Virus record (IMG/VR): IMGVR_UViG_3300047560_000921
Coordinates: 124,001-188,000 of that record
DNA: 64,000 nt
Direction: 5' to 3' (one strand)
Below the pieces are notes generated by a model, which was given only the letters and a program-made list of their open reading frames with translations, did no database searches and had not been told where the DNA came from. Positions 2,889 through 34,926 of this stretch are shown one piece after another. The position numbers and the translations under genes are program-made. Within the stretch, counting starts at the first letter, position 1. Each line of letters starts with the position of its first letter.

Positions 2889-3376
2889 TTAAGTCCTCTT
2901 AACATCCATTCGGCCAACATGTCTCGAATCTCGGGATATTTGTTCATTAAGTCTTCGTTGTTTGACATTGTCATAAACGCACGTTTAATTGCGTAAATGT
3001 CTTCCACCAATCTGTCCCAGTTAACAGTATGTTCTTTTGTTTTAAAAATAACCTGTTCGTCTTCTACATCTATTTGTAACTTGGCTTCCATATTAGTAAA
3101 GGTACCATTCCAACCAGCATTACTGCCTACAGCGCCAATGCCTACGTTGTAATTACTGCTCAATGTAGCAGTAGTAGTACCGCTGGCACCAATGCTAATG
3201 TAGGACGGAACTGTAACAGTGCCACTAGCCATGGTTGAATTTGTAATAGTAGAATTCAAAATGGCATCAATGTCTGCGCTATTAATTGTAATTGTATCCG
3301 TACTATTAATAGTGTACTCAGACTCGTCCTTCCAATCAAACTCCAAAGGAGTTAAATCATCTAATGGATGAGTCAT
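2885..3376 (-). CDS. hypothetical protein (Ser/Thr-rich middle)
   Basis: 163-aa ORF tightly packed in the operon. Confidence 0.65.
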   Translation of the reverse strand: MTHPLDDLTPLEFDWKDESEYTINSTDTITINSADIDAILNSTITNSTMASGTVTVPSYISIGASGTTTATLSSNYNVGIGAVGSNAGWNGTFTNMEAKLQIDVEDEQVIFKTKEHTVNWDRLVEDIYAIKRAFMTMSNNEDLMNKYPEIRDMLAEWMLRGLK

Positions 3377-3378
3377 AG

Positions 3379-4074: not shown

Positions 4075-4552
4075 TGTTATTGTCCTTCAAAATGTTCTTT
4101 AAATTTTCAGCTTCGGCTACACGCTTACGTAAACTACTAGAGCTAAAGCTATGATCTCTACTGTTAAAAACTAACTGGATGTTCCTGGAGTGACACTCTA
4201 CTCGTCCAGTAAAGTTTTTATCTTCGTACTCGACTCCTAGTATTCTAACATCAATAGGCAGAATAAGCAAGAGGTCAACTAAGTCTTGCTCTGTGTTATA
4301 CACTACAATTTCGTCCACATAACGAACAGCGGCCAATTGGATTTGTCGTTCGACAATACTTTGGATTGGTGCGTTCTTCTCTGGACGATCCCATTGTGCA
4401 TTATTTTGGAGTCCTGCAATTAAGTAGTCACAATGATTCTTAGCTTCGGCCAGCATAGCAATGTGTCCGGCATGTAACATGTCAAACTGACTAAAGGTAA
4501 TACCAATCTTTAGTCCTTTATCTTTAAGCTCTCTGACCTTGCTAAAAATCAT
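4067..4552 (-). CDS. cytidylyltransferase (TagD/RfaE-II-like HxGH nucleotidyltransferase)
   Basis: FDMLHAGHIAML (HxGH), QSIVERQIQL, SSSSLRKR. Confidence 0.9.
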   Translation of the reverse strand: MIFSKVRELKDKGLKIGITFSQFDMLHAGHIAMLAEAKNHCDYLIAGLQNNAQWDRPEKNAPIQSIVERQIQLAAVRYVDEIVVYNTEQDLVDLLLILPIDVRILGVEYEDKNFTGRVECHSRNIQLVFNSRDHSFSSSSLRKRVAEAENLKNILKDNNNE

Positions 4553-14499: not shown

Positions 14500-15036
14500 T
14501 TATTGATCCGGTGTTTCAAATAAGTCAGCTTCTGCGACTCTACGCTTAGTCAAACCAGGAAGTTCTTTTCCTCCTGCTTTGTTCCAACGCATAAACTGTT
14601 CGCGGCATCCTGCAAAGTTACCTGCGTTTACAGTCTTAAGCAAAGTGCTGGCACGTAAGTTACCTACACCTGCATTGTAAGCAAAGCTAACTAGCGCATC
14701 AAACATGTTTTGGGTGACGTGCGGGTTAGTTACCAATTTGTCCACATTGTGGGCAAACTCGTCTACTTCAGTTTCAAATAACTCGTTAGCATCAGCTAGC
14801 GAACATTCGTCACCGTCTGCTACTGGTGTATCGTCTGCCCAACGTGTATTGCCCCAACCAATGGTTGCAACGTTGGCACTACAGCGGTAGCTATATACTG
14901 TCTGTTCTGTGTTGATTAGGTTTGTTACTGGTTTTGGTTTGATCTTACCTAGTGCGGCAGATCCTGGGATTGAACTATAGCATCCTTCAAAATGCTTAAT
15001 TAAATCTAATCCATGTTGACCTATTGTTCTAGCCAT
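14500..15036 (-). CDS. GH24 lysozyme (endolysin)
   Basis: LIKHFEG...CSANVATIGWG, FDALVSFAYNAG, WNKAGGKELPGLTKRRVAE; ACAGGAG RBS before ATG 15036. Confidence 0.92.
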   Translation of the reverse strand: MARTIGQHGLDLIKHFEGCYSSIPGSAALGKIKPKPVTNLINTEQTVYSYRCSANVATIGWGNTRWADDTPVADGDECSLADANELFETEVDEFAHNVDKLVTNPHVTQNMFDALVSFAYNAGVGNLRASTLLKTVNAGNFAGCREQFMRWNKAGGKELPGLTKRRVAEADLFETPDQ

Positions 15037-15062
15037 ATGTGTGCTCCTGTATATCCTTATAT

Positions 15063-16241
15063 TTACCAAATATAGGGAAACAGTTGCTGGCTGTTTGTTT
15101 TCCTGATTGCGTCTAAGTCCGTTAAGTACTTACGGGTAGATTCTATTCCATTGCTGTGAGTTTTAAGCAAATTATCCACTAAATCAGGCATTTCAGAAGT
15201 TAAATTATGCTCTTTGAGCCATTGTCTGTGGAACTGAGTCATACGCCTTGCTTCGTCTCTATGTTCCATGGGCAGTAAATCAGCTTTTAAATTCTCTGGG
15301 AAACTGATAGTGTTGTATTGATAATTGTGTATGCCCGTAGCGGTGTAGATAGCACGTTCAATCTTGTCCAGGTCCAGGATGTTTAATATGCTAATGCTAG
15401 GGGTAATTTTAATGTCAATGTGTGGGCATTGGTTCTTAACCTGTGTTAAGTTTTCTAGTATTTGCTTCCAGCTGGCACCCCGACGAATGTAATCAAATCG
15501 GTCCCAGACGTTGTCTATGCTAACTAGCATACTGATATTGCTAAAGTTATTCCATAAGTCCAAGACATTCTTTTTCTTGTAGTTCAAGTTGGTTAAGTTT
15601 GTTATATAGGATATGTTAACTTGCTTTTTGTTTGCGGCAAAGTATTCTAGAATTTCATAGTGCTGATCCGTTACTAGTGGTTCCCCTCCGGCAAAGGTAA
15701 CGTTTTCTACGTCATCTAAATACTCTTCTTTTAACTGTTCCATAATGTCTAAACTTAATATTCTATCATGTCCGCTACTGCGTCCTAATTTAATCCAATC
15801 GCTATGCCATGTGCTACTAAACGTTGGGCCACAACTTACACAGGCCAAATTGCAAACGTTACTGAATCTAATGTCAAGATATTTAAGTTTAAAATCAGTA
15901 AAGTCTGTGGGGTGATATTTAAAGCTATTGATACGCATACTGTCCATACCAACAGCTTCTTGCTCATAGCATTTATAGCAAGTGTCTACAAGCTCACCCG
16001 CCAGCATTTTTTGTTTTATTTCTTTGAACTTGTCACCATTAACTATGTCTATGATTTTAGTTTGGTTTAAGTTACCAATGGGTTTAAGCGGATCACTCAA
16101 GCAACAAGGAAACGCTTTACCGTCGGGCCATGCATGTAAATGAACCCATGGTAAAGTGCAGATGCTTTTATTTGTAGTAGGATCTAAGGATCTCGTACCA
16201 CTCGGGGAAAGTGTCTTTAAAGCTCTGTTTACGATATTCAT
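15063..16241 (-). CDS. N-terminal twitch-domain radical SAM protein
   Basis: CTLPW..DGKAFPCC..CYKC twitch; CNLACVSC; FAGGEP. Confidence 0.9.
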   Translation of the reverse strand: MNIVNRALKTLSPSGTRSLDPTTNKSICTLPWVHLHAWPDGKAFPCCLSDPLKPIGNLNQTKIIDIVNGDKFKEIKQKMLAGELVDTCYKCYEQEAVGMDSMRINSFKYHPTDFTDFKLKYLDIRFSNVCNLACVSCGPTFSSTWHSDWIKLGRSSGHDRILSLDIMEQLKEEYLDDVENVTFAGGEPLVTDQHYEILEYFAANKKQVNISYITNLTNLNYKKKNVLDLWNNFSNISMLVSIDNVWDRFDYIRRGASWKQILENLTQVKNQCPHIDIKITPSISILNILDLDKIERAIYTATGIHNYQYNTISFPENLKADLLPMEHRDEARRMTQFHRQWLKEHNLTSEMPDLVDNLLKTHSNGIESTRKYLTDLDAIRKTNSQQLFPYIW

Positions 16242-17358
16242 CTTGTTCTTCGTTACGCTTCATAAACAAGCGCATCTTTTCTGGGTCTGGTTCACTGGCC
16301 ATGAAGTTTAATATTGGCAGTATCTCTGGCTGGTACTCTTGTAAAGGACTTAACTTCTTAACTAGAATTTCTTTAATAGCAGGATCTAATGCCGCAATGC
16401 TTTGGTCATAAGGTGCATGTAATATATTGTACCAAACGCTGGTACCAATGTTTTTTACAATCTCATTGGTAATTTCATCTAAGTAAAATATATTGTAGTT
16501 ACTTATAGTTGCGTTAGTACTTAATCTAATCCATGAATGTTCTTTGAACTGTAGTACATGGTCACGTACTCGTGCCCATTGGCTAGGATAACGTTGGTAA
16601 TGATGTCTATCGCCAATATCATCAACACTTACTTGTACATCTACCAGTTTAAACTGTTTCCACAATTCAATTTGTTCATCACTAGGCATGATACTGCCGT
16701 TGGTATTGTAGTGTATAGTTTGGCGTTTACTGTATCCTTTTTCCGCACTGTGCTCGAGTATGGTCCACATGTTTTCAATTAGCAATGGTTCACCGCCATA
16801 TAAGTCCATGTGTTCAATGTTAGGTAATGCTTGTTCTAAATTGTCCCAAATGTTTTGATCCTTTTTCCAAGCATCACGCATTTCCTTAAAGCTACGATGA
16901 AACTCTACTTTACTTTCAGTAGGTTTACGCAAGTCATACCATTCGTCAATCCACTGACTGCTATTCATAGGATTACATATACGACATTTTAAGTTGCACA
17001 AGTTACCCATCTTCAAGTCAACAATTTTAATAACATGTTCGCCGGGCATGATTGTTTTCTTGCCGTCTAGGTATTCTTTGCTGTCGCGCATACGCTTACT
17101 GTTTTGGCCAGCACGTTCTTCATCCCAACAACGTTTGCAGTTAGGATGCTTAAAGCCAATGTTCAAGTCTCTGCGTAGCTCGCTCATCCACTTACTGTCA
17201 AAGGCTTCCTGCATGTTGTCTATGCTGGGCTTAAATGGCGTACCGTCATCTTTTCTAATAGCCAGCTCGCTCATACAACATGTTTTGTAATGTCCGTCTG
17301 GCGTAGTGCTAATAGCCGCATTAGGATGAATACAGAATGTTTGTTTATTAATATACAT
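16168..17358 (-). CDS. N-terminal twitch-domain radical SAM protein
   Basis: CIHP..DGHYKTCC..CKRC; CNLKCRIC; YGGEP. Confidence 0.9.
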   Translation of the reverse strand: MYINKQTFCIHPNAAISTTPDGHYKTCCMSELAIRKDDGTPFKPSIDNMQEAFDSKWMSELRRDLNIGFKHPNCKRCWDEERAGQNSKRMRDSKEYLDGKKTIMPGEHVIKIVDLKMGNLCNLKCRICNPMNSSQWIDEWYDLRKPTESKVEFHRSFKEMRDAWKKDQNIWDNLEQALPNIEHMDLYGGEPLLIENMWTILEHSAEKGYSKRQTIHYNTNGSIMPSDEQIELWKQFKLVDVQVSVDDIGDRHHYQRYPSQWARVRDHVLQFKEHSWIRLSTNATISNYNIFYLDEITNEIVKNIGTSVWYNILHAPYDQSIAALDPAIKEILVKKLSPLQEYQPEILPILNFMASEPDPEKMRLFMKRNEEQDEYRKQSFKDTFPEWYEILRSYYK

Positions 17359-18571
17359 CGTACCATTCCTTAAACCATGGATGCAAGTCTAGTAAGTTTT
17401 GACGTCTATGTGAATCCATAAACTTCATACGCTTGATAAAGTCTTGCTTGTCTTGTTCACTGGGACTAGGTAGTGCGGCAATCTTTTCCAAACTCTTTAC
17501 CATGTTAGATAAAGCATAGTGTTCGCCGAACTTACTGTTAATGTGTTTGGCAGCATCTAAAGCAATACTAGCTCTAACTGAATCTGGTAGCACTTCGGGT
17601 CTCATACAAGTTGGATGATCCACGTTGATGACAAATATGTTAAAGTCTAGTTCGCCTACTAAAATGTCAGCAACCTTTTTCATGCTGGGCATAGTTAAGT
17701 TGCTTAGTGTAGTATGTATGCAAGTCTTGTTATTAGGACGTTGCTTAGACCAGTACTTTAGTTCTTGTAAGTTACTGTAAATCTTATCCCACTTAGCTGG
17801 CCAACGCACATACTCGTAGTATTCTTCCACACCGTCTATGCTGGCGTTTAAGTTTACTTCTTTAAAGTGGCTCCACTTGTCGTACCACTTGCTACCAATA
17901 GTAGTAATGTTACTGTTATACTCGAGCGAAATGTTTTTAGCAAAGTCTAGTTCAATTAGCAAGTCCAGAAACTCTTCTTGCTCGTCCATGATTAAAGGTT
18001 CGCCGCCAATGATGTATACGCTTTTTAAATCGTGCCCTTGTTCACGGACAACATCAAATAGTCTGCTACGCTTAACCCAACTAGTCTTCTCCAAGAAGTC
18101 CATGTCAACTTGTGTGTATGCATTGGCTGGGTCTTTGTTAATTTCCTGTGCTAGCAAACTGCTACTATACGGATGGCACATTCTACAAGCTAAGTTACAT
18201 TTGTTACCAAAGTCTAGTTCTAAACGTTCCAGCTTTACAGTGGCATCGCCTTGTAATAACTTATTGTAAGTCTCTGGGAATCTATATGTATTATTAATTT
18301 GTCTGTAGCTTTCAGCTTTGATGTCCTCTAGCTTCCAGCAACGTTCGCATTGTGCTGGTTTGTATCCTGCTAGCATAGTACTGCGTACTCGTTGCAATGC
18401 AGAATTGTGTTGCCATGTTAATTCAACTCGTTGCGTAACAGGAGCAGGCATATCGCTATTGCTAAGTCCACCATTGAGTGCATTACAACATAAACGCTGA
18501 TGCCCACTTTGCCCAATACTCAACGTATTAAAGGGCAGTACGCACAACGTATCATTTAACGTATTTTTCAC
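17348..18571 (-). CDS. N-terminal twitch-domain radical SAM protein
   Basis: CVLPF..GHQRLCC..CERC; CNLACRMC; IGGEP. Confidence 0.9.
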   Translation of the reverse strand: MKNTLNDTLCVLPFNTLSIGQSGHQRLCCNALNGGLSNSDMPAPVTQRVELTWQHNSALQRVRSTMLAGYKPAQCERCWKLEDIKAESYRQINNTYRFPETYNKLLQGDATVKLERLELDFGNKCNLACRMCHPYSSSLLAQEINKDPANAYTQVDMDFLEKTSWVKRSRLFDVVREQGHDLKSVYIIGGEPLIMDEQEEFLDLLIELDFAKNISLEYNSNITTIGSKWYDKWSHFKEVNLNASIDGVEEYYEYVRWPAKWDKIYSNLQELKYWSKQRPNNKTCIHTTLSNLTMPSMKKVADILVGELDFNIFVINVDHPTCMRPEVLPDSVRASIALDAAKHINSKFGEHYALSNMVKSLEKIAALPSPSEQDKQDFIKRMKFMDSHRRQNLLDLHPWFKEWYDVY

Positions 18572-19898
18572 AATCTTTTAAAAACTTTTCGTATTCTGGA
18601 AATGTAGACAAGAAATCGGTTCCTCGTCTGCGGTCATGCTCCATGAAGAATCTGTAGAAGTCTGCCTTGGCGTTTATTTCTCTAACCAATGACAATGTGT
18701 GTTTGCGGAAGTGACTGCGAACACGTTCTAGTCGTTCTATTTCAATAGCATTGAAACCTTTATTTAAATGCTCTTTCATAAATGCAATGTCTGCATCTAT
18801 GTAATGTACAAAGTCTGGAGGTAGTATTCCTATGCTCCAGTGGTCGGGCTCTTTAAGGTGCGGTGTAATAAACTCTACACGATTGCCGTAGAGCTGTCGC
18901 CATTCTAATATCTTTTTCAGTAACTGATTAAAGCTAGGCAATACCATGTTGTTGTATGTAACCATAATTTCAACACTGGCATTGATGTCCTTAAAGTTAT
19001 CCATTATAGTTTTAAAGTTCTGTTCCCATACGGCACAGTCTAATCCATAACGAATGTATTCAGCAGGCTTGCCCCAAGTATCTAAACTAACATGCATACG
19101 ATAATTCTTAATTGCACGTTTGCTTAACAATGTTTTAACACGTTCGCTTAATCGTTCTATTAACGCAGGCTTGACGCCCAAGTTACTATTGATTAGCAAT
19201 GTAAGATGCGGAGCAGGTTCTGCTTCTAACTTGTCTAACAGTTGCCATGTGTTTTGATTAAGCATGGGCTCACCGCCGGTAATGCGTAAAGTCTGTAAGT
19301 CTTTAATCAGTGTAGGCCACCAAGCCCAAAATGCTTTTACGTAAGGATTGTTTTCATCATCGCTTTCGTAGTATTCTCTGTCCTTGATAAAATCGATGCT
19401 GTATTGTTTTGTTAGTACAGGAAAGTTGCCATTGGTCTTAATGTCGTTGATCCAACTGTTGCTAACTGTGGGAGTGCAATAACCACACATAAAGTTACAA
19501 ACATTACCAAAGTTAACTTCGATGAACTTGGGGTTAAAATCATCAGTAGGACCTAAGCTACGCACAATGTCATAGACGTCCATGTCATTGGCACTGTTAA
19601 TAATCCTATCACTGATGTGTCCATTGTCTTCTACTTGCCAGCAAAAGTTACATTCTTCTGGACGCTTACCCGATAGCATTTGCTGTCTACGTTCTTGCTT
19701 GTGTGCAGTATTATGTAGGCCAGAAGGGCTACGCTTGATATCCTTAATATCAATCTTATGTGGGTGTGGATGATAACAACTATGGTTATCTCCTGTTTGC
19801 AAATACAATGTTTGCTGAGTCCATTTAAGTAAACAGAATCCTTGTCCTACTTGATCCAGTTTGGCTTTAACGGACTTTAGTCTATCTAGCTCATCCAT
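18552..19898 (-). CDS. N-terminal twitch-like radical SAM protein
   Basis: FCLLKW..NHSCYHP..CNFC; CNFMCGYC; TGGEP; likely start MDELD at 19898. Confidence 0.9.
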   Translation of the reverse strand: MDELDRLKSVKAKLDQVGQGFCLLKWTQQTLYLQTGDNHSCYHPHPHKIDIKDIKRSPSGLHNTAHKQERRQQMLSGKRPEECNFCWQVEDNGHISDRIINSANDMDVYDIVRSLGPTDDFNPKFIEVNFGNVCNFMCGYCTPTVSNSWINDIKTNGNFPVLTKQYSIDFIKDREYYESDDENNPYVKAFWAWWPTLIKDLQTLRITGGEPMLNQNTWQLLDKLEAEPAPHLTLLINSNLGVKPALIERLSERVKTLLSKRAIKNYRMHVSLDTWGKPAEYIRYGLDCAVWEQNFKTIMDNFKDINASVEIMVTYNNMVLPSFNQLLKKILEWRQLYGNRVEFITPHLKEPDHWSIGILPPDFVHYIDADIAFMKEHLNKGFNAIEIERLERVRSHFRKHTLSLVREINAKADFYRFFMEHDRRRGTDFLSTFPEYEKFLKDCEKYVK

Positions 19899-21195
19899 TT
19901 GTTTGTGTCTTGTGATGTTGGCTTCCCAGCTCACCGTTGTCTAGTTTGTTCCACTCTTTACCACAGCAAGTACTACATTGACGACTACGCATATTGTGTC
20001 CTTTGTATATACTGCGTGGCAGGAACCTATCAAAGAACTGTCCTTTAAGAACTTGGGCCAATGTGTTCTGGTGCAAGCTCAATGTATCCATACCGCCAGC
20101 AAGTTCAATCATTTGAATACTTGCATCATCGCTGATGTTCTTAAATGCCGCACCTTGCTTGGCAACTTCCCACGGTCTGTCGTCACTGATATGACGCCAT
20201 GGCTCGCCACCAATAAAGCAACATGGGAATACATGTCCGCTGGCACTGACAAAGATTTCGTTTAGTTGATTATTGCCGCCCTTTTCGTGATGCTGTGCTC
20301 TGCAACTAACTTCGATGTCATTGTGTTTGAACTTGACCCATTCGTTCTTTTCGTTGTCCCATTCTCTGTGCTCCAAACTAATTTGTTGCATCTTATCAAA
20401 CTCTTGATTAGTAATGTACATAGGAACAATACCAATAGTCTTTAGTTCTTTAAAGTTACTATCCCTAAAGTTTTCGTTGTCTGGTTGTTCTAATTTGTAT
20501 AGCACTTGCTTGTCTTTGTTAAGCACTTCGTAGAACCCGCGGCCAGCATCGTCCCACTTGTGCCAACGAGTAGTACGCTTAACGTTAAAGAACTCAAAGC
20601 CCAATTCATCTGCTAGTGCTCGTGCTTGTTCGACTTGATGTTCGTTATGTTTGAATACAATAAAGTCCCACTTGGCAACCCCACCAGCAGCCTTAAATGC
20701 TTTCATGTTAGCAAGGATCTTACTGAACTTAGTATTACGGCGATACAAGTGATTAGTGTCTTCTAACCCGTCCACACTAAACACGCAAAAGTCTCCACGC
20801 TCAAAGTTATTAACCACTTTACCTAGTTCAGTCCACCAAGCAGGTGTACGTGCGCTGGCATTGGTATGTAACGTAAGAGCCATGTCAGGATTATGTTCTC
20901 TCATGTACTTGAAGATTTCTAAACTGTCTTTGGCAACAATAGGGTCTCCGTAATTACCACATGCATACACACGCTTTAACTGCTTGACAAAGGCAGGTGG
21001 GAACCATGTTTTAAATTGTTCCAGGGTAATTTCAGTTTCTTGCACCTTAGGATTCATCTCTGCGCCGTTGTTAATATAACGTGGACACATAGGACAACCG
21101 GCATTACACTTGTCTGTTAGTTCTAAGTGCATACCTGTAATTTCGCCCGGGCCGTACAAGGCTGGCACATCATAGTTCATTAATCTCATTTCCAA
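19891..21195 (-). CDS. radical SAM protein with C-terminal SPASM/twitch domain
   Basis: CNAGCPMC; GNYGDP; C-terminal GHVFPCC...CSTCC. Confidence 0.9.
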   Translation of the reverse strand: MEMRLMNYDVPALYGPGEITGMHLELTDKCNAGCPMCPRYINNGAEMNPKVQETEITLEQFKTWFPPAFVKQLKRVYACGNYGDPIVAKDSLEIFKYMREHNPDMALTLHTNASARTPAWWTELGKVVNNFERGDFCVFSVDGLEDTNHLYRRNTKFSKILANMKAFKAAGGVAKWDFIVFKHNEHQVEQARALADELGFEFFNVKRTTRWHKWDDAGRGFYEVLNKDKQVLYKLEQPDNENFRDSNFKELKTIGIVPMYITNQEFDKMQQISLEHREWDNEKNEWVKFKHNDIEVSCRAQHHEKGGNNQLNEIFVSASGHVFPCCFIGGEPWRHISDDRPWEVAKQGAAFKNISDDASIQMIELAGGMDTLSLHQNTLAQVLKGQFFDRFLPRSIYKGHNMRSRQCSTCCGKEWNKLDNGELGSQHHKTQTNG

Positions 21196-22592
21196 TTCCT
21201 ATATACTTGTTCACACATATAAAAGAAGTCTGTGTATTCTGGGAAGGTAGCTAATAAGTTAGTACCTCTACGTTTGTCATGTTCTGTAAAGAACGTATAA
21301 AAATCTCTGCGCCCTTGTCTTATAACATCTGCATTTACTGGATTCTCTGCCATGTAATCAACTACACGCTTGAACTTTTCAATTTCTACTTTATCAAACC
21401 CATGCTTAAAGTCTGGCCTGCGTTCTCGATACTTCATATGACGCAAGTGGTCATACATATTGTCCAAGAAGTTCTTAGTTAAAATGTTAATCATCCAGTG
21501 AGGCGGTTCTTTTAAGTAAGGAGTATCAAAGCCAATGCGTTGGGTATACATGTTTTCCAGTGTACCGTATTCTTCTCTTAACGCTAGTATTTTGTCCAGT
21601 AACAATCTAAACTTAACTACACTAAGGACGTTAAATGTAATCATCAAATTGATTTTACTGTTTGGTACAGTGTCTAAGAATATACGTACATTCTTTTCCC
21701 ATAGCGCACAGTCTAAGCCATTACGCATATACTCTGCACGTTCACCCCAACTGTCAATGCTGGTAAACAGTCTAAAGTCTTTAATCTTTCCTTCTGCTAG
21801 CAACTTACTTACTTTCTCGCTCAGTTTCTCTACTAGGCTAGATTTCATGCCCAAGTTACTGTTGATATGTAATTGTAGCTCTGGCGCAGGATCTTCATCT
21901 AACATGTCTAACAGTTTAAACGTATTGCTATTAAGCAATGGCTCACCACCGGTGATCCGGAATACTTTTAAGTCCTTCTTTAGACTTGGCCACCACTCCC
22001 ACCATGCATCCACATAAGGGTTCGGCATATCAGGTTCGTAAAATACTCCGGCCTTTAAGAAGTCAATGCTGTACTGTTTGGTAGTAATGTCATAGTCGCC
22101 TTTGCGTTTGATTTCTTCCATCCATGCGCTACTAGCCTGTGGACAGCAGTATCCACATTTAAGTTGGCAAGCATTACCAAAGCTAACTTCAATGTGTCTG
22201 GGATTCCAATCTGCATCAGCATCTAAGTTTCTAATAGTGTCGTAGTCTTCGATAGCATAGTCACTGGTACTGTGTACAAATCTATCACTGATGTGGTCAC
22301 CTTGCAAGTCTTCGACGTTCCAACAGTAATAACATTCACTGGGACGTTCGCCTTCTAGCATTAGTTTGCGTTGTTGCTTTTTGTACTCTGTATTGTGTAG
22401 TCCACTAGGGCTTCTTTGTATATCTTCTATTTTAATCTTGTGTGGACGTGGATGGTAACAACTGTGGTTGTCGCCCATGTGCAAATACAATGTTTCCGTT
22501 TGCCATTTCATCAAGCAAAAGCCCTTGCCCACTGCATTGAGCTTTTCTTTTGTTTCTAATAGTTTGTCGTAATAGCTTTTAGGCTCTTGCAT
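21186..22592 (-). CDS. N-terminal twitch-like radical SAM protein
   Basis: FCLMKW..NHSCYHP..CYYC; CQLKCGYC; TGGEP; start reassigned to MQEPK (22592) because the longer ORF overlaps the next gene. Confidence 0.9.
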   Translation of the reverse strand: MQEPKSYYDKLLETKEKLNAVGKGFCLMKWQTETLYLHMGDNHSCYHPRPHKIKIEDIQRSPSGLHNTEYKKQQRKLMLEGERPSECYYCWNVEDLQGDHISDRFVHSTSDYAIEDYDTIRNLDADADWNPRHIEVSFGNACQLKCGYCCPQASSAWMEEIKRKGDYDITTKQYSIDFLKAGVFYEPDMPNPYVDAWWEWWPSLKKDLKVFRITGGEPLLNSNTFKLLDMLDEDPAPELQLHINSNLGMKSSLVEKLSEKVSKLLAEGKIKDFRLFTSIDSWGERAEYMRNGLDCALWEKNVRIFLDTVPNSKINLMITFNVLSVVKFRLLLDKILALREEYGTLENMYTQRIGFDTPYLKEPPHWMINILTKNFLDNMYDHLRHMKYRERRPDFKHGFDKVEIEKFKRVVDYMAENPVNADVIRQGRRDFYTFFTEHDKRRGTNLLATFPEYTDFFYMCEQVYRNWK

Positions 22593-24222
22593 TATAACTG
22601 TTCTCGCATTGTTTCCAATAGAGCTGTAGCTCTGGGAATGTCTTAACAAAGTTTGTACCTTTGCGATAATCATACTCTCTAAAGAAAGCATAAAAATCTC
22701 TACGCAATAATGCACGTTCGTTGTCAGTGTATGTACAACTCTTCATCCATGCAATGTTGCGTTTTAGTTTGTCTATTTCAAAATCTGCAAAGCCAATTAG
22801 TTCGCCGTGTACTGCTACACTGTTTGCTTCCATAAACTCAACTGCTTTATCTAAGATGCTGTGCATGTTAGCGGGCAAGTTTTGTATAGTTAACCAAACA
22901 GGAGTGCGTAGTGTAGGAATGTCAAACCATACACGTTGTCGGTCCCAGTAGTTATTAAACTCGGGATTCTTTTCTGGAATGTCCTTGAGACTGTTAACAT
23001 ACTTACGCATGTCTAAAATCATCTCTAAGTATTTTTGCAATCCAGGAACGCTTAATAGATTGAATGTGTTAATAAAATTAACAGTGGTCATATGAGTATC
23101 ATATAACACACGCTTAGTATTAGTTATCAGTGTATCATAGTTCATTCCATTGCGAATGTACTCTGCTTGTGCGCCATGACTGTCCACGCTTACATAAATG
23201 CCAATGTGTCTACACGCTTTTGTTCTAGTTAACTCGTAGCTAAAGCTACCGTCTGCGGGAACATGGTCAATGGTTGGCAAGCCATGTATCTGCAATCTAT
23301 GTAGTGTGTCTACATTAACTTGTGACTTGTTTAACACATGGCGCGGCCATTTAGTGTGACTTTTCTTTCCATTGTTAACTGCTATAACTGTGGCACTGGC
23401 ACTGTAGTTTTCGATGGCTTGTACGCTATTAACAAACTTGTCTAGTAAGTCTTGCGATGGCGGGCACATGTTGGTAGTAATACCAATCTCTAAATCACCC
23501 TTAGGGTTCGCCGCAATGTAATCTAAAACCTTAAACGTGTTCTTATCCATGAGTGGTTCGCCACCAGTCATACGGAATACAAGTAGTGTTTCATACAACT
23601 CAGGCCACCACTTCCAAAATGCCTCTACGTAAGGATTATCTCTGTTAGCTACCTTTAAGGGCATTAAGCCGTTGGCTTCTAATGCAGGGATAGCATTGTG
23701 TGGTGTACTAGTAGGATAAGGCCCGTACTCTTTAATTTCTTCTTCCCATGCAGTGCTTAAATGCGGACTGCAATAAGCGCATTTAAAGTTACAACTTTGA
23801 TTAAAGTTAACTTCTACATAAGTGGGGTTAGGTTCTAGATTACTGATACTATCGCGATAAGGCAACGCCCAGTGTTCGCTACTACGATAATGTCTATCGC
23901 TGGCACTGCCTTGTGCTTCTAAACTCCAGCAGTACGAACAACCTGCAGGCTTTTTACCCGCAAGCATTTGTTTTCGTTCTTCTATCTTTTGGTCAGTATT
24001 ATGTAATGCGCTAGGCCTGCGCTGTATTTGATCAATGCTAATTGCGTGAGTAGGCGGATGATAGCAACTGTGAGTTCTGCCATTGGTTAAATGTAGGCTG
24101 ACGTGGTACCATTTAGCCAAACACATGCTGTCACTTTGACTGTTAAGCCATTCAGTGCTAGACTCTCTTAGTTTGGCTACCTCAGTAGCGGTAAGTGGAT
24201 TTGTGTGTACGTATGGTCGCAT
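22579..24222 (-). CDS. N-terminal twitch-like radical SAM protein
   Basis: MCLAKW..THSCYHP..CSYC; CNFKCAYC; TGGEP. Confidence 0.9.
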   Translation of the reverse strand: MRPYVHTNPLTATEVAKLRESSTEWLNSQSDSMCLAKWYHVSLHLTNGRTHSCYHPPTHAISIDQIQRRPSALHNTDQKIEERKQMLAGKKPAGCSYCWSLEAQGSASDRHYRSSEHWALPYRDSISNLEPNPTYVEVNFNQSCNFKCAYCSPHLSTAWEEEIKEYGPYPTSTPHNAIPALEANGLMPLKVANRDNPYVEAFWKWWPELYETLLVFRMTGGEPLMDKNTFKVLDYIAANPKGDLEIGITTNMCPPSQDLLDKFVNSVQAIENYSASATVIAVNNGKKSHTKWPRHVLNKSQVNVDTLHRLQIHGLPTIDHVPADGSFSYELTRTKACRHIGIYVSVDSHGAQAEYIRNGMNYDTLITNTKRVLYDTHMTTVNFINTFNLLSVPGLQKYLEMILDMRKYVNSLKDIPEKNPEFNNYWDRQRVWFDIPTLRTPVWLTIQNLPANMHSILDKAVEFMEANSVAVHGELIGFADFEIDKLKRNIAWMKSCTYTDNERALLRRDFYAFFREYDYRKGTNFVKTFPELQLYWKQCENSYNARA

Positions 24223-24238
24223 AATTAACTGCGTAGAT

Positions 24239-24245
24239 TATTTAT
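24239..24245 (-). promoter_or_regulatory. T4-like late promoter box (ATAAATA)
   Basis: AATAAATA on the minus strand about 17 nt upstream of ATG 24222. Confidence 0.5.
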
Positions 24246-24268
24246 TCTACGCTAGTTAACTGAAAATG

Positions 24269-24661
24269 TCAAGACGTAACTTTAGGTGGATGTTGAGTTT
24301 TATTTGAACTCATCATGTTCGAACTAGTAGGATGTTGCTTCCAATGTTCGCTGTGTAATTCACTAGCAATATTAGGCTTGTGTGCAACTAGCCATTTCTT
24401 AATAACAGGAATACAGTCAGCTTTGGGATCCTTCTTTTCTTTGTAAAAATCAAGAAGTTCTTGATGTAAGTCAGGATAAGTCAGGCCTACTCTGCTCAAC
24501 GCTTTGATGCTATCATAAGCATCTTTACCAACAGCAACAGTTCCAAACAGAACCAAATGGCCCAAGCCGATAATATCAATTTTAGCACGTTCGACATCCC
24601 ATAAGTCACCAGAAGGTTTCCATACTCCTTCTTGTTCATTTAAAAATTCATGTGCTCTCAT
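24269..24661 (-). CDS. hypothetical protein with MRxxE[F/L] leader
   Basis: Starts MRAHEFLNE. Confidence 0.7.
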   Translation of the reverse strand: MRAHEFLNEQEGVWKPSGDLWDVERAKIDIIGLGHLVLFGTVAVGKDAYDSIKALSRVGLTYPDLHQELLDFYKEKKDPKADCIPVIKKWLVAHKPNIASELHSEHWKQHPTSSNMMSSNKTQHPPKVTS

Positions 24662-24677: not shown

Positions 24678-25421
24678 CTATTTAATCAATTTTATCATTA
24701 AGCCTGCAAAGTCAAATTCCCACCACTTTTCTTTGGTTGTGTAGCTAATGGGATTGTCGTGGTGATTGGCATGCCATCCCTCCCCAAAGAACAGTATAGC
24801 AGTAATAGGGTTATTGTAAGCATGATGTTTAGGGTTATCCCTGTTTCTGTAGCCAAACCAGTGGTTAATAGTGTTTACACTGCCGCCTATTTCCCATAGC
24901 AATGCCATTGGGGCTAGATATGCACAAATAAACAATGCAGGGCTAATCAGCAACCATGTAATGCCAATGATAATGTGTAGCTTGAAATAGTTTCTATTCA
25001 GCTTAGTTTGGAACTTGTCCTTGAGCATGTCTATAATATGCTCTCCGCCGGCTTGCCCAAACATGCCTAAGAACTGGACTCTAGCTAGGCCCAAGTGCTC
25101 AGGTCCATGTGGGTCACGTTCCGTATCTACAAACTTGTGATGTGCTCTGTGTACTGCGGTCCATACCATGGGACTACCAATGCCCGCATAAGCACCTAGC
25201 AAACTGCCAATCTTCCTGTATCTGTCACTGGCTGGCCAACTGTTGTGTGCTAGCAGTCTGTGGTAAGTCATTACTAGGCCAAAGCATCCGCACAGAACAA
25301 ATACAACCAGTGTAACTAACCACGCAAGGGTAGTGCCGTAGACAATTTGGTATACCAGGCCCATGTGTGCAAGTATTTGTAAGTACAAGACTTTCCAGCT
25401 GGTAGTGAGATATTTTTTCAT
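24678..25421 (-). CDS. membrane fatty acid desaturase (delta-9 acyl-CoA/DesC-like)
   Basis: His boxes HRLLAH, HRAHH, HANHH; TM segments; FGEGWH. Confidence 0.93.
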   Translation of the reverse strand: MKKYLTTSWKVLYLQILAHMGLVYQIVYGTTLAWLVTLVVFVLCGCFGLVMTYHRLLAHNSWPASDRYRKIGSLLGAYAGIGSPMVWTAVHRAHHKFVDTERDPHGPEHLGLARVQFLGMFGQAGGEHIIDMLKDKFQTKLNRNYFKLHIIIGITWLLISPALFICAYLAPMALLWEIGGSVNTINHWFGYRNRDNPKHHAYNNPITAILFFGEGWHANHHDNPISYTTKEKWWEFDFAGLMIKLIK

Positions 25422-26044
25422 AGGAATAAGTTACAAAGGAGAATCTTACGAGTTTGTTGTACTAGTGGTACACAGTGCCAAGTGACTTCAGTGTTAAGCC
25501 AAAAGGTTCCTGTCCACTTTTTATTTCTACCACGATGTATAATCTTTTCAGGATACTCGTGTTCTACTTGCTCAGGCATCCAACGCATAATACGTTCACG
25601 AGCAAATGTAGTTTGCGTTTCGTTGTCCTGCAAATTAATAATACCCGACAGCAAAACAAATCTGTTATCTAAATGCCAGCCTTGATGAAACCCCGGCTTG
25701 TCTATTACACGGCTAAAAGCAACTTTAGTTCTGCTAGCATAACGCTTTGTATACCATACATCAAAGTTAGGACTATCGAACAGTGGATAACGCAATGGAT
25801 CTAGGGCCATTAAACGTTGTGTAATTGTTTTAAGTGGATCATACATTTCCTTAGACAACTTGCTGAACTCGTCATTAACATCGTCTCTGGGAAATATACT
25901 TAAACGCTGTGGCTCAACTTCTAGATTACCATAATCAATTCTGCCAGGTTCGGCAGCAAATAGCAAATCAGTATCAAACCTTTCAAACTCTGGAAACTCA
26001 ACATCCAATATAGCTGGTTCTTTGGAAATTTCGAAGATATTCAT
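25418..26044 (-). CDS. putative 2OG-Fe(II) oxygenase-like protein
   Basis: WHLD (HxD) and distal TWHCV; the ORF track starts at TTG 26080, the first ATG is at 26044. Confidence 0.55.
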   Translation of the reverse strand: MNIFEISKEPAILDVEFPEFERFDTDLLFAAEPGRIDYGNLEVEPQRLSIFPRDDVNDEFSKLSKEMYDPLKTITQRLMALDPLRYPLFDSPNFDVWYTKRYASRTKVAFSRVIDKPGFHQGWHLDNRFVLLSGIINLQDNETQTTFARERIMRWMPEQVEHEYPEKIIHRGRNKKWTGTFWLNTEVTWHCVPLVQQTRKILLCNLFL

Positions 26045-26080
26045 TAGCACAGTATACACTAAGAACAAGTGTACAGTCAA

Positions 26081-26523: not shown

Positions 26524-26964
26524 TTAGTTTCTACGTAGAATACTTCTTAACATCCACGCATGTTTTTTGTGTACATCCACACGGTCTTGGATAAAGTTGC
26601 TTAGTCCAAGTTCTTGTGCGCCTTCTGCAAATTCGTACACTCTGTACAATAGTCCTAAGATCTTTTCGTTGTCGTCATGAATCTTAGCTATCATATCTAA
26701 TGCAGTAGGAATTTTTAATTCGTCTTCGATGATTGTTAGTTCTGCAAAACGACTTAAACTGCCAGGTGCAAACGAACCTAACTTACGAATGTTTTCAGCA
26801 ATAGGATCTACTGCTTCCCATAGTTCAGTATACAAGTCTTCAAAGAATTTGTGGAACTGAGGAAAGTGAACTCCTTCTACGTTCCAGTGATAGTTGTGTG
26901 TTTTAAGATATAATGCAAAAGTGCTGGCGTGCAACACTTTCATTTCGTGTACTAGTTGTTCCAT
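26524..26964 (-). CDS. dps: Dps family ferritin-like DNA protection protein
   Basis: LKTHNYHWNVEG, HKFFEDLY, DPIAENIRKLG, KKHAWML. Confidence 0.95.
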   Translation of the reverse strand: MEQLVHEMKVLHASTFALYLKTHNYHWNVEGVHFPQFHKFFEDLYTELWEAVDPIAENIRKLGSFAPGSLSRFAELTIIEDELKIPTALDMIAKIHDDNEKILGLLYRVYEFAEGAQELGLSNFIQDRVDVHKKHAWMLRSILRRN

Positions 26965-33822: not shown

Positions 33823-34926
33823 TTACAGAATGTTGGGGTTTACACCCACTTGAACTAGCCTGTTGCGTATGGTTTCTTCCATGCTGGCAGCGATTTCATC
33901 ATCTTCGCGCCACATGTCGTCGAAGTTTAAGTCAGCATTTTCTAGAATTCCTAACTTGGCAAATGTCTTAGTGATTCTAGGAGTTAACAAGCCAATGTCC
34001 TTGATGATAGGAACAATGCGGCTCATCATGTGCTTTTTGACTTTGTGGTAAGCAACGTTTTCTTTAATCTGACGGCCAACATCTTTCATGTCCAAGTGAT
34101 GGTCCAGGATTTCGTTAAAGTCTAAACGTGCATACAGCCACATAACACAAGCAATCAAATAGTCCTCGCGGTCCATTAGTTCTTGCGGGGTTAGGCTCTT
34201 ATAAAAGTCTTTAAGAATGTAACGTCCAAATGCAATATGTCTGGCTTCGTCCTGCATGATATAAGCTAACATACTTTTAGCCAATGGGTTAGAAGCATTG
34301 TCACGCATTAGTTGCATACTACCGATACCCCACCCTTCTGCTACAACGTGACTATTAAGGAACACTAAGTCCCACTTGTCGCTTTTAAACGCAATTTCAT
34401 ACATCTTCATCAAGCTACGCTGTACAGGACGTACCATGTCAATGCGGTGTGCAAACTTACCAAACGCTTCGATGTGACGACTTTCGTCAATGGCCTGTGT
34501 AGTAGCTAGCCACTTAGCATCATGATCTGGTGCGCTTTCGATAATCTTAGCCGCACTAATCATAGCACCTTGCTCACCGTGAATAAAGGCCCCAATCAAG
34601 TAAGCATTATAATCGTAGACAATATCGTCTCTAGTCTTTTGACTTAGCTTGCCCCATAGCTCAGTGCCATATAAAGGAACAATAGTTTCGTCAATACCCA
34701 TTGGATTGCGTGGGTCTGTTTCAATGGACCAATCAATTCTAGTTTGTGCGTCCCACTGCTCTCGCTTACTTTTTTCGTACAGTGCTAGCAGTTCTTTTCT
34801 ATGGTCGTTGTATTCCCAGCTGAAGTTGGTGGGACAGCCATTGGCAATTTCCCAGTTCATTTGATAGCCAGCAGGTAGCTGGCTTTGTGTTGTGTGTGGA
34901 CCCAATGGGTGCTGTCTGTTTGTCAT
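33823..34926 (-). CDS. ferritin-like diiron oxygenase (AurF-like family)
   Basis: HGEQG...DESRH...EGWG...DEARH paired ExxH diiron ligands; YEKSKREQWDAQTRIDW. Confidence 0.8.
   Translation of the reverse strand: MTNRQHPLGPHTTQSQLPAGYQMNWEIANGCPTNFSWEYNDHRKELLALYEKSKREQWDAQTRIDWSIETDPRNPMGIDETIVPLYGTELWGKLSQKTRDDIVYDYNAYLIGAFIHGEQGAMISAAKIIESAPDHDAKWLATTQAIDESRHIEAFGKFAHRIDMVRPVQRSLMKMYEIAFKSDKWDLVFLNSHVVAEGWGIGSMQLMRDNASNPLAKSMLAYIMQDEARHIAFGRYILKDFYKSLTPQELMDREDYLIACVMWLYARLDFNEILDHHLDMKDVGRQIKENVAYHKVKKHMMSRIVPIIKDIGLLTPRITKTFAKLGILENADLNFDDMWREDDEIAASMEETIRNRLVQVGVNPNIL

What the first reader, a model, noticed from the sequence alone, without database searches (positions are those of the whole stretch)
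15063..24222. Array of seven tandem twitch/SPASM radical SAM enzymes
Seen: seven consecutive, overlapping genes over 9.2 kb, each with an intact CX3CX2C motif plus auxiliary Cys clusters, and six with the auxiliary domain N-terminal. Established: N-terminal twitch radical SAM proteins are a family of unknown function, and SPASM/twitch enzymes commonly modify peptides or proteins. Inference: a late-expressed assembly line that makes several distinct radical modifications on virion proteins, surface glycans or a small molecule. No obvious short precursor peptide lies within the array.
Basis: partly seen in the sequence, partly recalled or inferred. Interest (0 to 1): 0.8.

Follow-up and report, generated by a model that had tools for sequence, protein, structure and literature searches.

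The report
Phage operon of seven radical SAM enzymes
A freshwater jumbo phage carries a conserved, strongly selected seven-gene operon of radical SAM enzymes from an uncharacterised, largely viral family, and their gene neighbours in hundreds of related phages point to stepwise remodelling of a sugar or glycan, though no substrate has been shown.

Summary
Seven back-to-back minus-strand genes (15063-24222) each keep CX3CX2C. Six score 295-326 bits on NCBIfam NF033640, the N-terminal twitch radical SAM family. The seventh (R5) has its Cys cluster at the C-terminus.

This is not a recent amplification. Paralogues are 21-49% identical and belong to separate subfamilies. These recur in other phages in a broadly recurring order B-A-c8-C-D-E; the window reads B A c8 A C D E. 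The same seven genes, flanked by a 130-aa gene and a lysozyme, occur in relatives at 72-98% identity. dN/dS is 0.01-0.04, as for the DNA polymerase.

"Late-expressed" is not supported. A near-consensus sigma70-type promoter lies directly upstream of the first gene and is conserved in a distant relative. No RNA data were found.

No precursor peptide or RiPP recognition element (RRE) was found. In hundreds of related viral contigs the arrays follow GT8-like and GT-A-fold glycosyltransferase-like genes and sit among nucleotide-sugar enzymes. None of these conserved glycosyltransferase families lies in this window.

Best reading (about 0.45): a multi-step radical tailoring line for a carbohydrate-type substrate. 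Protein, DNA and lipid targets remain open.

The parts
24244..24272 (-). sigma70-type promoter (TTGACA-17-TAGAAT) directly upstream of R7
   Evidence: An 11/12 match. The window has 13 such matches against 2.1+-1.6 expected, and 12 are on the coding strand. The promoter is kept as TTGACA-17-TATAAT in L214/L215 while flanking bases differ.
22579..24222 (-). R7, N-terminal twitch radical SAM, subfamily B, with a ~65-residue insertion
   Evidence: NF033640 at 294.8 bits. CX3CX2C at residue 144, auxiliary Cys at 34/53/95/98. Clade of 22 with support 100. Insertion seen.
21186..22715 (-). R6, N-terminal twitch radical SAM, subfamily A (probable start 22592, 468 aa)
   Evidence: NF033640 at 306.7 bits. 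49% identical to R4 and its sister in the tree. The orthologue in L214 is 468 aa.
19891..21195 (-). R5, radical SAM with a C-terminal twitch-like Cys cluster (family c8)
   Evidence: PF04055 at 33.5 bits. CX3CX2C at residue 30. Cys 298/325/326/407/411 conserved in 35 homologues. Sits between A and C subfamilies in other arrays.
18552..19934 (-). R4, N-terminal twitch radical SAM, subfamily A (probable start 19898, 448 aa)
   Evidence: NF033640 at 303.8 bits. AF2 model pLDDT 96.3. Nearest solved folds are anSME, BlsE and viperin, with TM 0.56 or lower.
17348..18571 (-). R3, N-terminal twitch radical SAM, subfamily C
   Evidence: NF033640 at 299.8 bits. Clade of 9 with support 98.
16168..17358 (-). 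R2, N-terminal twitch radical SAM, subfamily D
   Evidence: NF033640 at 308.1 bits. Clade of 23 with support 76. Distant relatives in KVP40-like vibriophages.
15063..16241 (-). R1, N-terminal twitch radical SAM, subfamily E; overlaps R2 by 74 nt
   Evidence: NF033640 at 325.9 bits and Pfam SPASM 8e-10 on residues 28-92. The overlap is conserved.
14500..15069 (-). Endolysin/lysozyme, conserved co-oriented downstream neighbour, probably on the same transcript
   Evidence: phrog_7 at 1e-49. PF00959 on the L214 orthologue. Same position in L003, L004, L214 and L215.
24269..24661 (-). 130-aa protein of unknown function, conserved upstream neighbour of the array
   Evidence: No family hit. Homologues at 57-91% identity. 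The 62% homologue P0007 lies directly before the same seven-gene array.
24678..25421 (-). Membrane fatty-acid-desaturase-family di-iron enzyme
   Evidence: PF00487 at 3e-14. NF049918 at 2e-20, below its cutoff. Three His boxes and a hydrophobic stretch. 81% orthologue in L214.
25418..26080 (-). c33, putative Fe(II)/2OG-oxygenase-like protein that recurs next to arrays in other phages
   Evidence: Cluster c33 lies adjacent to arrays in L058, L065, L066 and L074. Invariant H124-x-D126, H190 and R199. No database hit, so the fold is an inference.
26524..26964 (-). Ferritin/Dps-family protein (possible iron supply; the link to the array is speculative)
   Evidence: phrog_3636. PF00210 Ferritin on the 77% orthologue in L214.
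35905..37935 (-). B12-binding (class B) radical SAM enzyme, family c22, which also ends arrays in other phages
   Evidence: PF02310 plus PF04055. 54% identical to L006:18118-20142. c22 HMM at 1e-141. Only sub-cutoff NCBIfam hits.
33823..34926 (-). AurF-like di-iron oxygenase (membership in the same pathway not shown)
   Evidence: PF11583 at 2.6e-21.

Best explanation
The seven genes are one co-transcribed cassette of seven different radical SAM enzymes.

Each enzyme binds a SAM-cleaving [4Fe-4S] cluster at CX3CX2C and one auxiliary cluster in a twitch domain. The twitch domain is N-terminal in six enzymes and C-terminal in R5. Each generates a 5'-deoxyadenosyl radical to abstract a hydrogen atom from its substrate.

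Because each gene belongs to a separate old subfamily and the genes sit in a broadly recurring order, they most likely perform successive, different steps on one substrate lineage. These steps would be of the kinds known for twitch enzymes: oxidation, epimerisation, dehydration or deoxygenation, decarboxylation.

The most likely substrate class is carbohydrate: a nucleotide sugar, an aminocyclitol-like molecule, or a glycan already attached to a carrier or protein. The product would be an unusual glycoconjugate on the virion or on the infected cell's surface.

Shown: the enzyme family, intact cofactor motifs, operon structure, conservation, purifying selection, and the gene neighbourhoods in relatives.

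Inferred: the substrate class, the order of reactions, and the final location of the product.
For: - Family and motifs. Confident model of R4 at pLDDT 96.3.
- Operon: 4-74 nt overlaps, and a conserved promoter before R7.
- Conservation of all seven genes with their flanks in L003/L004 (87-98% aa identity) and L214/L215 (72-86%), with every Cys motif intact apart from a mis-called start of R1 in L214.
- dN/dS of 0.013-0.043, against 0.023-0.037 for the DNA polymerase.
- Distinct subfamilies and a broadly recurring order B-A-c8-C-D-E.
- At least 599 viral stretches encode relatives. 64 of 86 loci carry two or more copies.
- Carbohydrate context in relatives. Arrays directly follow c1, whose model has a GT-A fold (BcsA, SunS, PcManGT, WrtF). 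Two copies of c2 lie nearby, and the c2 profile hits glycogenin (GT8) at 1.8e-8.
- In c1-ascertained loci, 42 of 42 have an N-twitch rSAM and in 38 it is immediately downstream.
- The arrays also hold a UDP-Glc/GDP-Man dehydrogenase and an NAD epimerase/dehydratase. SGNH-like and methyltransferase-like proteins were recognised from motifs. c5 is possibly GT10-like.
- RsoM2USA has an R4-like gene beside a carbamoyltransferase. KVP40 has a GT(PF00534)-small-rSAM unit.
- Published notes: GT8 genes plus radical SAM cassettes in the pelagimyophage tail-fibre region (PMC7029224), and amidinotransferases beside rSAM clusters in CP220 (PMC2853527).
- Solved twitch enzymes acting on sugars are among the structural and sequence neighbours: BlsE and AprD4, and the BtrN twitch domain.
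- This phage itself encodes ADH-type and weakly Gfo/Idh/MocA-like dehydrogenases and a UDP-Glc dehydrogenase-like protein elsewhere.
Against: - None of the conserved glycosyltransferase families (c1, c2, c5) lies in the 64-kb window or in the extra ~30 kb of the contig that I read. In this lineage the immediate neighbours are a desaturase-family enzyme, a 2OG-oxygenase-like protein, an unknown 130-aa protein and a lysozyme.
- Structure search does not discriminate. The best match is anSME, a protein-modifying enzyme, and SuiB and EpeE also appear.
- Bacterial arrays in Bdellovibrionota have mixed neighbourhoods.
- The c1-rSAM fusion rests on one 2.7-kb contig.
- The c1 and c5 assignments are of moderate to low confidence.
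- No enzyme of the family has a known substrate.
Confidence: 0.45

Rival explanations
1. The enzymes modify a protein or peptide, such as a virion or tail-fibre protein or a longer RiPP-like substrate encoded elsewhere. They would install cross-links, epimerised residues or oxidised side chains, as most characterised SPASM/twitch enzymes do.
For: - The best structural neighbours include anSME, SuiB and EpeE.
- The best PDB sequence hit is the RiPP enzyme TvgB, 8vpo.
- In most related phages the arrays lie just after tail-fibre-like genes (c27, c7) and a Ser/Thr/Gly-rich protein, c6.
- The nearby B12 rSAM is closest to RiPP C-methyltransferases, though far below cutoff.
- One family representative (P0056) appears, by eye only, to have a subtilisin-like N-terminus.
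Against: - No RRE or other peptide-binding domain was found in any of the seven.
- No conserved short ORF is present in or beside 86 arrays, and only 7 of 599 gaps are 150 nt or longer.
- The Bdellovibrionales array has no precursor in its only gap.
- The recurrent partners are sugar enzymes, not proteases, transporters or leader-binding proteins.
Confidence: 0.2
2. The enzymes act on nucleotides or DNA. They would build a hypermodified base or a modified nucleotide, possibly glycosylated, that protects phage DNA or interferes with host processes.
For: - In this window the array lies in the replication and nucleotide-metabolism part of the genome. DNA polymerase is 1.2 kb away, and GTP cyclohydrolase I, a PRTase and a dCMP deaminase are on the contig.
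- Weak sub-cutoff similarity to MoaA, viperin and QueE, and viperin among the fold neighbours.
- A sigma70-type promoter, as for early genes.
- Glycosyltransferases can also serve DNA glycosylation.
Against: - QueE, viperin and MoaA models score 17-44 bits against cutoffs of 180-284.
- No DpdA-, QueC- or hydroxymethylase-type partner was seen next to any array.
- In most phages the arrays are at the tail-fibre end, together with three or more glycosyltransferase-like families.
- The adjacent 'DNA binding protein' is a ferritin/Dps family member.
Confidence: 0.1
3. The genes are auxiliary metabolic genes acting on lipids or other host small molecules. They might work with the adjacent membrane desaturase-family enzyme, or they might be unrelated enzymes that merely sit together.
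For: - A desaturase-family gene and a 2OG-oxygenase-like gene lie just upstream and are conserved there in L214.
- GDGT-MAS/Tes, a lipid rSAM, appears among the weak hits.
- Earlier authors proposed metabolic roles for the phage rSAM genes of CP220 (PMC2853527).
Against: - The promoter between the 130-aa gene and R7 separates the array from the desaturase.
- The desaturase is absent from the arrays of most other phages.
- The broadly recurring order and tight coupling argue for one pathway.
Confidence: 0.1
4. The array is a decaying product of tandem duplication with no current function.
For: Only the tandem arrangement itself, plus the R4/R6 lineage-specific duplication.
Against: - dN/dS of 0.013-0.043 for R1-R6, equal to the DNA polymerase.
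- All cofactor motifs are intact in four related assemblies.
- No frame-breaking variants were found in other metagenomes. The only indels listed compensate each other within 8 nt and come from diverged sequences.
Confidence: 0.02

Closest known systems
NCBIfam NF033640 'twitch domain-containing radical SAM protein' (N_Twi_rSAM)
   Same: Six of the seven proteins are full-length members at 295-326 bits. They have the reversed domain order: twitch first, then the radical SAM core.
   Different: The family has no assigned function. The window adds a fixed seven-gene arrangement of five subfamilies plus a C-terminal-twitch relative. I did not find this arrangement described.
Sugar- and aminoglycoside-tailoring twitch radical SAM enzymes (BtrN, AprD4, BlsE)
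   Same: One auxiliary cluster in a short Cys-rich domain. The BtrN twitch aligns to the N-terminal domain. BlsE and AprD4 are among the fold neighbours. Sugar-enzyme neighbourhoods occur in relatives.
   Different: The domain order is permuted. Identity is 9-16% and TM is 0.56 or lower. No shared substrate is shown. Those enzymes act singly in their pathways, not as arrays of five to seven.
SPASM radical SAM peptide and protein maturases (anSME, SuiB, TvgB, PqqE)
   Same: Radical SAM core plus an auxiliary Fe-S domain. anSME is the best structural match.
   Different: Only four conserved auxiliary Cys, so one cluster rather than two. The domain is N-terminal. No RRE, no precursor gene, no transporter or protease partners.
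Multi-copy radical SAM genes of T4-like phages (Campylobacter phages CP220/CPt10; marine T4-like genome with 12; 'radical SAM cassettes' in pelagimyophages)
   Same: Large myoviruses with many rSAM genes, some clustered, near amidinotransferase or GT8/LPS-type genes (PMC2853527, PMC5332604, PMC7029224).
   Different: Those reports count genes and do not define family, subfamilies, order or selection. R5 finds CP220 only at 27% identity over the rSAM core.

Membership tests
Radical SAM superfamily | CX3CX2C motif ligating the SAM-binding [4Fe-4S] cluster | tested here: met
   One motif in each of the seven proteins. Invariant in 122 relatives.
Radical SAM superfamily | Profile match to PF04055 and a SAM-binding GGE motif | tested here: met
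   PF04055 is above its 29.5-bit cutoff for five. R4 (26.1) and R7 (26.3) are just below. GGEP is invariant.
Radical SAM superfamily | Partial TIM-barrel core fold | tested here: met
   The R4 model has pLDDT 96.3. All top Foldseek hits are radical SAM enzymes at probability 1.00.
NF033640 N_Twi_rSAM | Whole-protein score above the curated cutoff (170 bits) | tested here: met
   R1, R2, R3, R4, R6 and R7 score 295-326 bits. R5 scores 52.7 bits and is not a member.
NF033640 N_Twi_rSAM | Cys-rich auxiliary domain N-terminal to the radical SAM motif | tested here: met
   Four invariant Cys precede CX3CX2C. Pfam SPASM hits R1 residues 28-92. The BtrN twitch aligns to profile positions 17-84.
SPASM subfamily (two auxiliary clusters) | Seven to eight conserved Cys (CX9-15GX4C ... 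CX2CX5CX3C ... C) | tested here: not met
   Only four invariant Cys, and five in R1-R3, lie in the auxiliary domain. That is enough for one cluster, so the domain is twitch and not SPASM.
RiPP maturase systems | Adjacent precursor peptide gene | tested here: not met
   No room inside the array. No conserved small ORF in 86 related loci. None in the Bdellovibrionales array gap.
RiPP maturase systems | RiPP recognition element or other leader-binding domain | tested here: not met
   No such Pfam or NCBIfam hit. The R4 model shows only the twitch, the barrel and a C-terminal helical region.
Sugar-tailoring twitch radical SAM enzymes (BtrN/AprD4/BlsE type) | Activity on a carbohydrate substrate | not testable with these tools
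   Only indirect support: GT8, a GT-A-fold protein, and nucleotide-sugar dehydrogenase and epimerase genes beside arrays in relatives.
QueE (7-carboxy-7-deazaguanine synthase), as some vibriophage homologues are annotated | Score above the curated QueE model cutoff | tested here: not met
   TIGR03963 scores 17-27 bits against a cutoff of 260. The annotations seen are therefore unsupported.
Viperin-like (prokaryotic viperins) | Score above the NF038283 cutoff (180 bits) | tested here: not met
   16-37.5 bits.

The most novel reading that the evidence does not exclude
N-terminal-twitch radical SAM arrays are the core of a widespread, virus-borne biosynthetic pathway. The family has about 8,850 clusters at 50% identity, and the Atlas clusters nearest to R4 are labelled 88-100% viral. 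In this reading, five to seven radical enzymes in fixed order rebuild a sugar into a structure with no known counterpart. Dedicated phage glycosyltransferases then place it on the virion or on the infected cell. Phages would thus carry their own radical glycochemistry.
Probability: 0.3. Interest if true: 0.8.

Novelty: new variant of a known kind. Interest (0 to 1): 0.62.

Why it matters
The enzyme family is named but has no known reaction. It comprises thousands of sequence clusters, and the Atlas clusters nearest to R4 are almost all labelled viral.

Two things make the family's chemistry directly testable. First, its members come as ordered, selected arrays. Second, two cultured phages carry small versions next to sugar-type genes: a glycosyltransferase-family gene in KVP40, and a carbamoyltransferase in RsoM2USA, which has a GT8-like gene elsewhere in its genome.

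If the substrate is a glycan, this would be a new layer of phage surface or host-surface chemistry, relevant to host range, superinfection exclusion and immune recognition. If it is a protein or DNA, it would be a new modification system.

Either way, seven new radical reactions are on offer to enzymologists.

Tried and rejected
- Nucleotide search of cultured phages found nothing. Protein searches found only RsoM2USA and KVP40-like or Campylobacter phages, at 22-34% identity.
- PHROGs and Pfam gave no hit for most conserved partner families. Profile searches of c1, c5 and c33 against PDB sequences were empty. hhalign of c1 against c2 was negative.
- The first profile (A1) was too diverse for a genome scan, as was A5 for a viral scan.
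- Bacterial neighbourhoods were heterogeneous.
- I read about 30 kb of the contig beyond the window (contig ~114.6-124 kb and ~188-215 kb) and found no glycosyltransferase module. About 114 kb upstream and about 16 kb at the far end remain unread.
- I looked for the T4 late promoter motif: one copy, far from the array, and fewer than chance.
- No RNA run could be listed. DNA contigs from other freshwater samples only showed presence plus cross-mapping of paralogues.
- The c1-rSAM fusion (P0055) looked decisive but rests on a single 2.7-kb contig, so I give it little weight.
- Most multi-module fusions are singletons. Only P0014 was reproducible among those I checked.
- Fold search of R4 did not separate sugar-acting from protein-acting relatives.
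- Rejected: QueE, viperin or MoaA identity, a full SPASM domain, and pseudogenisation.

Full report
**What is there**

Positions 15063-24222 hold seven consecutive minus-strand ORFs of 392-547 aa, with no other sizeable gene between them. I call them R1 (15063-16241) to R7 (22579-24222). Each has exactly one CX3CX2C.

Pfam finds the radical SAM domain in all seven. Five are above the gathering score, and R4 and R7 are about 3 bits below. NCBIfam places R1, R2, R3, R4, R6 and R7 in NF033640, 'twitch domain-containing radical SAM protein'. They match end to end at 295-326 bits against a cutoff of 170. Every other model, including QueE, MoaA, viperin and all RiPP maturases, is far below its cutoff.

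These six proteins have four Cys ahead of the radical SAM motif that are invariant in 13 and then in 122 aligned relatives. The GGE SAM-binding motif is invariant too. Four ligands fit one auxiliary cluster, so the domain is a twitch and not a full SPASM.

R5 is built the other way round. Its radical SAM motif is at residue 30, and five C-terminal Cys are conserved in 35 homologues.

- Part of the apparent gene overlap comes from taking the longest ORF. R6 probably starts at 22592 and R4 at 19898, as their orthologues do.
- The 74-nt R1/R2 overlap is real. The frame stays open and encodes the same Cys-bearing N-terminus in three other assemblies, although a gene caller missed it in one.

**Whose genome**

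The window is bases 124001-188000 of a 231-kb viral contig from a freshwater metagenome.

Its T4-type DNA polymerase (11172-13817) is 51% identical to that of Sinorhizobium phage Phosso, 47% to Atu_ph07 and about 43% to Rak2-like jumbo phages. No cultured phage matches at the DNA level.

**Is the array maintained?**

Two contigs carry the same genes in the same order at 87-98% amino-acid identity. A further lineage, found through the 130-aa gene upstream and present on 18 contigs, carries all seven genes at 72-86% identity. It has the same 128-aa gene before the array and the same lysozyme after it. All cofactor Cys are intact there.

dN/dS against the two close relatives is 0.013-0.043 for R1-R6. 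The DNA polymerase gives 0.023-0.037. dS is often above 1.5, so these ratios are approximate.

Contigs from other freshwater metagenomes show no frame-breaking variants.

**Not a recent amplification**

The paralogues are 21-29% identical, except R4/R6 (49%) and R7 against both (37-43%).

A tree of 227 family members puts R7, R3 and R2 in separate clades with orthologues from other phages. These clades have 22, 9 and 23 members, with support 100, 98 and 76. R1 falls in a loose group of 60. R4 and R6 are lineage-specific sisters (support 56) inside the large subfamily A. The tree was built with FastTree only, and the loci were ascertained through subfamilies A and B.

Across loci the subfamilies recur in a broadly recurring order, B-A-(c8)-C-D-E. 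The window reads B A c8 A C D E. L070, from a 108-kb contig, reads B A c8 C D (c29) E.

A profile search of 1.84 billion representatives finds 8,853 clusters at E<=1e-30. Of the best 150, 33 contain two or three complete modules in one polypeptide. One of these, P0014 (950 aa), occurs full length in four assemblies, while most others are singletons.

Distinct subfamilies, a recurring order, tight coupling and occasional fusion are what a multi-step pathway looks like.

**Expression**

A TTGACA-17-TAGAAT promoter lies at 24272-24244, in the 46-nt gap before R7.

The window holds 13 matches of this quality against 2.1+-1.6 in Markov shuffles. Twelve are on the coding strand, and most sit just before gene starts, including the DnaJ gene and a site about 135 nt upstream of the DNA polymerase start.

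In the 72-86% relatives the same gap reads TTGACA-17-TATAAT while the surrounding bases differ. The T4 late motif TATAAATA occurs once in 64 kb, 5.7 kb away.

The array with the lysozyme gene thus looks like an operon read by host-type RNA polymerase. This does not fit 'late-expressed', but timing was not measured, because no RNA run could be listed.

**What the enzymes look like**

The AlphaFold model of R4 is confident (pLDDT 96.3). Its nearest solved structures are anSME, BlsE, viperin, SuiB, NifB, AprD4 and GDGT-MAS. E-values are 2e-5 to 2e-3, TM is 0.56 or lower, and identity is 9-16%.

By sequence, the best PDB match is the core of TvgB. The twitch domain of BtrN aligns to the N-terminal domain.

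So the fold is as expected, no solved enzyme is close, and the neighbours include sugar-, nucleotide-, lipid- and protein-acting enzymes alike. I found no paper that characterises a member.

**Context in relatives**

At least 599 viral stretches encode a relative. In 64 of 86 loci examined there are two to six N-twitch genes within 10 kb. The nearest ESM Atlas clusters are labelled 88-100% viral.

Clustering the neighbours shows a conserved block upstream of most arrays:
- tail-fibre-like proteins (c27 and c7; c7 gives weak hits to the Peptidase_G2 IMC domain);
- a Ser/Thr/Gly-rich protein (c6);
- a ~115-aa protein (c3);
- two copies of c2;
- c4;
- c1, and then the radical SAM genes.

The c2 profile hits glycogenin, a GT8 glycosyltransferase, at 1.8e-8. 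The c1 model (pLDDT 86.7) matches GT-A-fold enzymes: cellulose synthase, SunS/ThuS, PcManGT, WrtF and sugar nucleotidyltransferases. E-values are 4e-4 to 1e-2.

When I started from c1 instead, all 42 new loci with enough downstream sequence carried an N-twitch gene, and in 38 it lay immediately after c1. These loci are close relatives of one another.

Inside or after the arrays lie:
- a UDP-glucose/GDP-mannose dehydrogenase and an NAD epimerase/dehydratase;
- SGNH-like and methyltransferase-like proteins, recognised from motifs only;
- c5, a possible GT10-like protein (weak lead);
- an AMP-binding enzyme, and a B12 radical SAM enzyme.

In cultured phages, RsoM2USA has an R4-like gene between two DUF6071 genes and near a carbamoyltransferase, and a GT8-like gene elsewhere. 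KVP40 has a co-oriented unit of GT (PF00534), a small protein and an N-twitch-type rSAM.

Published descriptions agree:
- GT8 genes, LPS-type sugar genes and 'radical SAM cassettes' in the tail-fibre hypervariable region of pelagimyophages (PMC7029224);
- amidinotransferases next to radical SAM clusters in CP220 (PMC2853527);
- an aminosugar-type trio with a radical SAM gene in cyanophage S-SCSM2R (PMC12801897).

**Context in this window**

None of c1-c7 is present in the 64 kb or in the roughly 30 kb of extra contig that I read. What the window shares with other arrays is R5 (c8), the B12 radical SAM gene at 35905-37935 (c22) and c33 at 25418-26080.

c33 keeps an H-x-D...H...R pattern typical of Fe(II)/2OG oxygenases, but it has no database hit, so this is an inference.

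Between c33 and the array lie a membrane desaturase-family gene and the unknown 130-aa gene.

The gene upstream that PHROGs labels 'DNA binding protein' belongs to the ferritin/Dps family. It could supply iron for some fourteen Fe-S clusters, but that is speculation.

Elsewhere the phage has ADH-type and weakly Gfo/Idh/MocA-like dehydrogenases, a weak GT1-like protein, a cytidylyltransferase-like protein and a short UDP-glucose dehydrogenase-like protein.

**Bacterial relatives**

Full-length relatives in genomes are almost all in Bdellovibrionota MAGs. One Bdellovibrionales chromosome has eight radical SAM genes in a row. They are flanked by PhoH/PIN, an asparagine-synthase-type amidotransferase and an ulvan-lyase-like gene. 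Only IS debris fills the single gap. Neighbourhoods overall are mixed, with three GT2 genes and ABC-2 transporter genes among mostly housekeeping genes.

**Weighing the readings**

A carbohydrate-type substrate is the only theme that recurs across distant carriers. It also fits the known chemistry of single-cluster twitch enzymes (established knowledge: BtrN, AprD4, BlsE and related epimerases act on sugars and aminocyclitols). I give it about 0.45, and no more, for three reasons. The glycosyltransferases are missing near this particular array. The c1 and c5 assignments are of moderate confidence. The fold search does not discriminate.

- **Protein or peptide target, about 0.2.** It is favoured by the family's kinship with SPASM maturases and by the tail-fibre neighbourhood. 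It is weakened by the lack of an RRE and of any conserved small ORF: only 7 of 599 gaps are 150 nt or longer.
- **Nucleotide or DNA modification, about 0.1.** It is suggested by the replication-region setting here and by the early-type promoter. The relevant family models fail, and no DNA-modification partners are seen.
- **Lipid or miscellaneous metabolic role, about 0.1.**
- **Decay, about 0.02.** It is contradicted by selection.

**Novelty**

The family is named, and multi-copy radical SAM genes in large myoviruses have been noted before.

I did not find the following described: that these genes are N-terminal-twitch enzymes of several fixed subfamilies in a recurring order, under strong selection, present in hundreds of viral contigs, and tied to a GT-A-fold gene. 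The window holds one of the longest versions, matched only by its own close relatives.

Noticed in passing
window 51334-54407 (-): The phage encodes a ClpB-like two-ring AAA+ chaperone (750 aa) and, next to it, a full DnaJ (J domain plus C-terminal domain). A near-consensus sigma70-type promoter sits before DnaJ.
   Followed up: no
window 1029-4552 (-); contig ~194-205 kb (L138, L139): A row of GNAT, HIT, phosphoribosyltransferase, GTP cyclohydrolase I and cytidylyltransferase-like genes. A PTPS/QueD-like gene, a cupin, a dCMP deaminase, a haem-oxygenase-like di-iron protein and a short UDP-Glc dehydrogenase lie elsewhere on the contig. This may be a pterin or deazapurine-type pathway. No QueC or DpdA was seen in the parts I read.
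   Followed up: partly
window 46148-50256 (+): The only sizeable plus-strand block, with lower GC (0.36-0.39) and inverted skew. It holds a 489-aa protein with two methyltransferase domains, an alpha/beta hydrolase and two unknowns, and looks like a separately acquired island.
   Followed up: no
window, whole: There are 13 near-consensus sigma70-type promoters (11/12 or better) against about 2 expected. Twelve are on the coding strand, mostly just upstream of gene starts.
   Followed up: partly
window 26524-26964 (-): The gene that PHROGs labels 'DNA binding protein' belongs to the ferritin/Dps family. It lies 2.3 kb upstream of seven Fe-S enzymes and is conserved there in L214.
   Followed up: partly
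L010/L134 7705-19240; L008: Bdellovibrionota genomes carry seven to eight tandem N-twitch radical SAM genes. Six of those in L010 are about 445 aa with 13-nt overlaps. No precursor or glycosyltransferase lies beside them.
   Followed up: partly
P0013, P0014 and 31 other representatives: Proteins with two or three complete N-twitch radical SAM modules in one chain. P0014 is reproducible in four assemblies, while the others checked were singletons. P0055 fuses the GT-A-like c1 to an rSAM module but is known from one short contig. P0056 has a subtilisin-like N-terminus, judged by eye.
   Followed up: partly
L213 5707-8029 (KVP40.0274-0272): In the cultured phage KVP40, a GT (PF00534), a 97-aa protein and an N-twitch-type radical SAM gene form one co-oriented unit. 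Homologues in other vibriophage records are annotated as QueE, which the QueE model does not support.
   Followed up: partly
window 22579-24222, residues ~270-335 of R7: R7 carries an insertion of about 65 residues in the middle of the radical SAM domain. It is absent from the other paralogues and from subfamily-B relatives in L006 and L007.
   Followed up: no
window 33823-34926 and 40390-41478 (-): An AurF-like di-iron N-oxygenase family protein and a UvdE UV-damage endonuclease, both unusual phage cargo.
   Followed up: no
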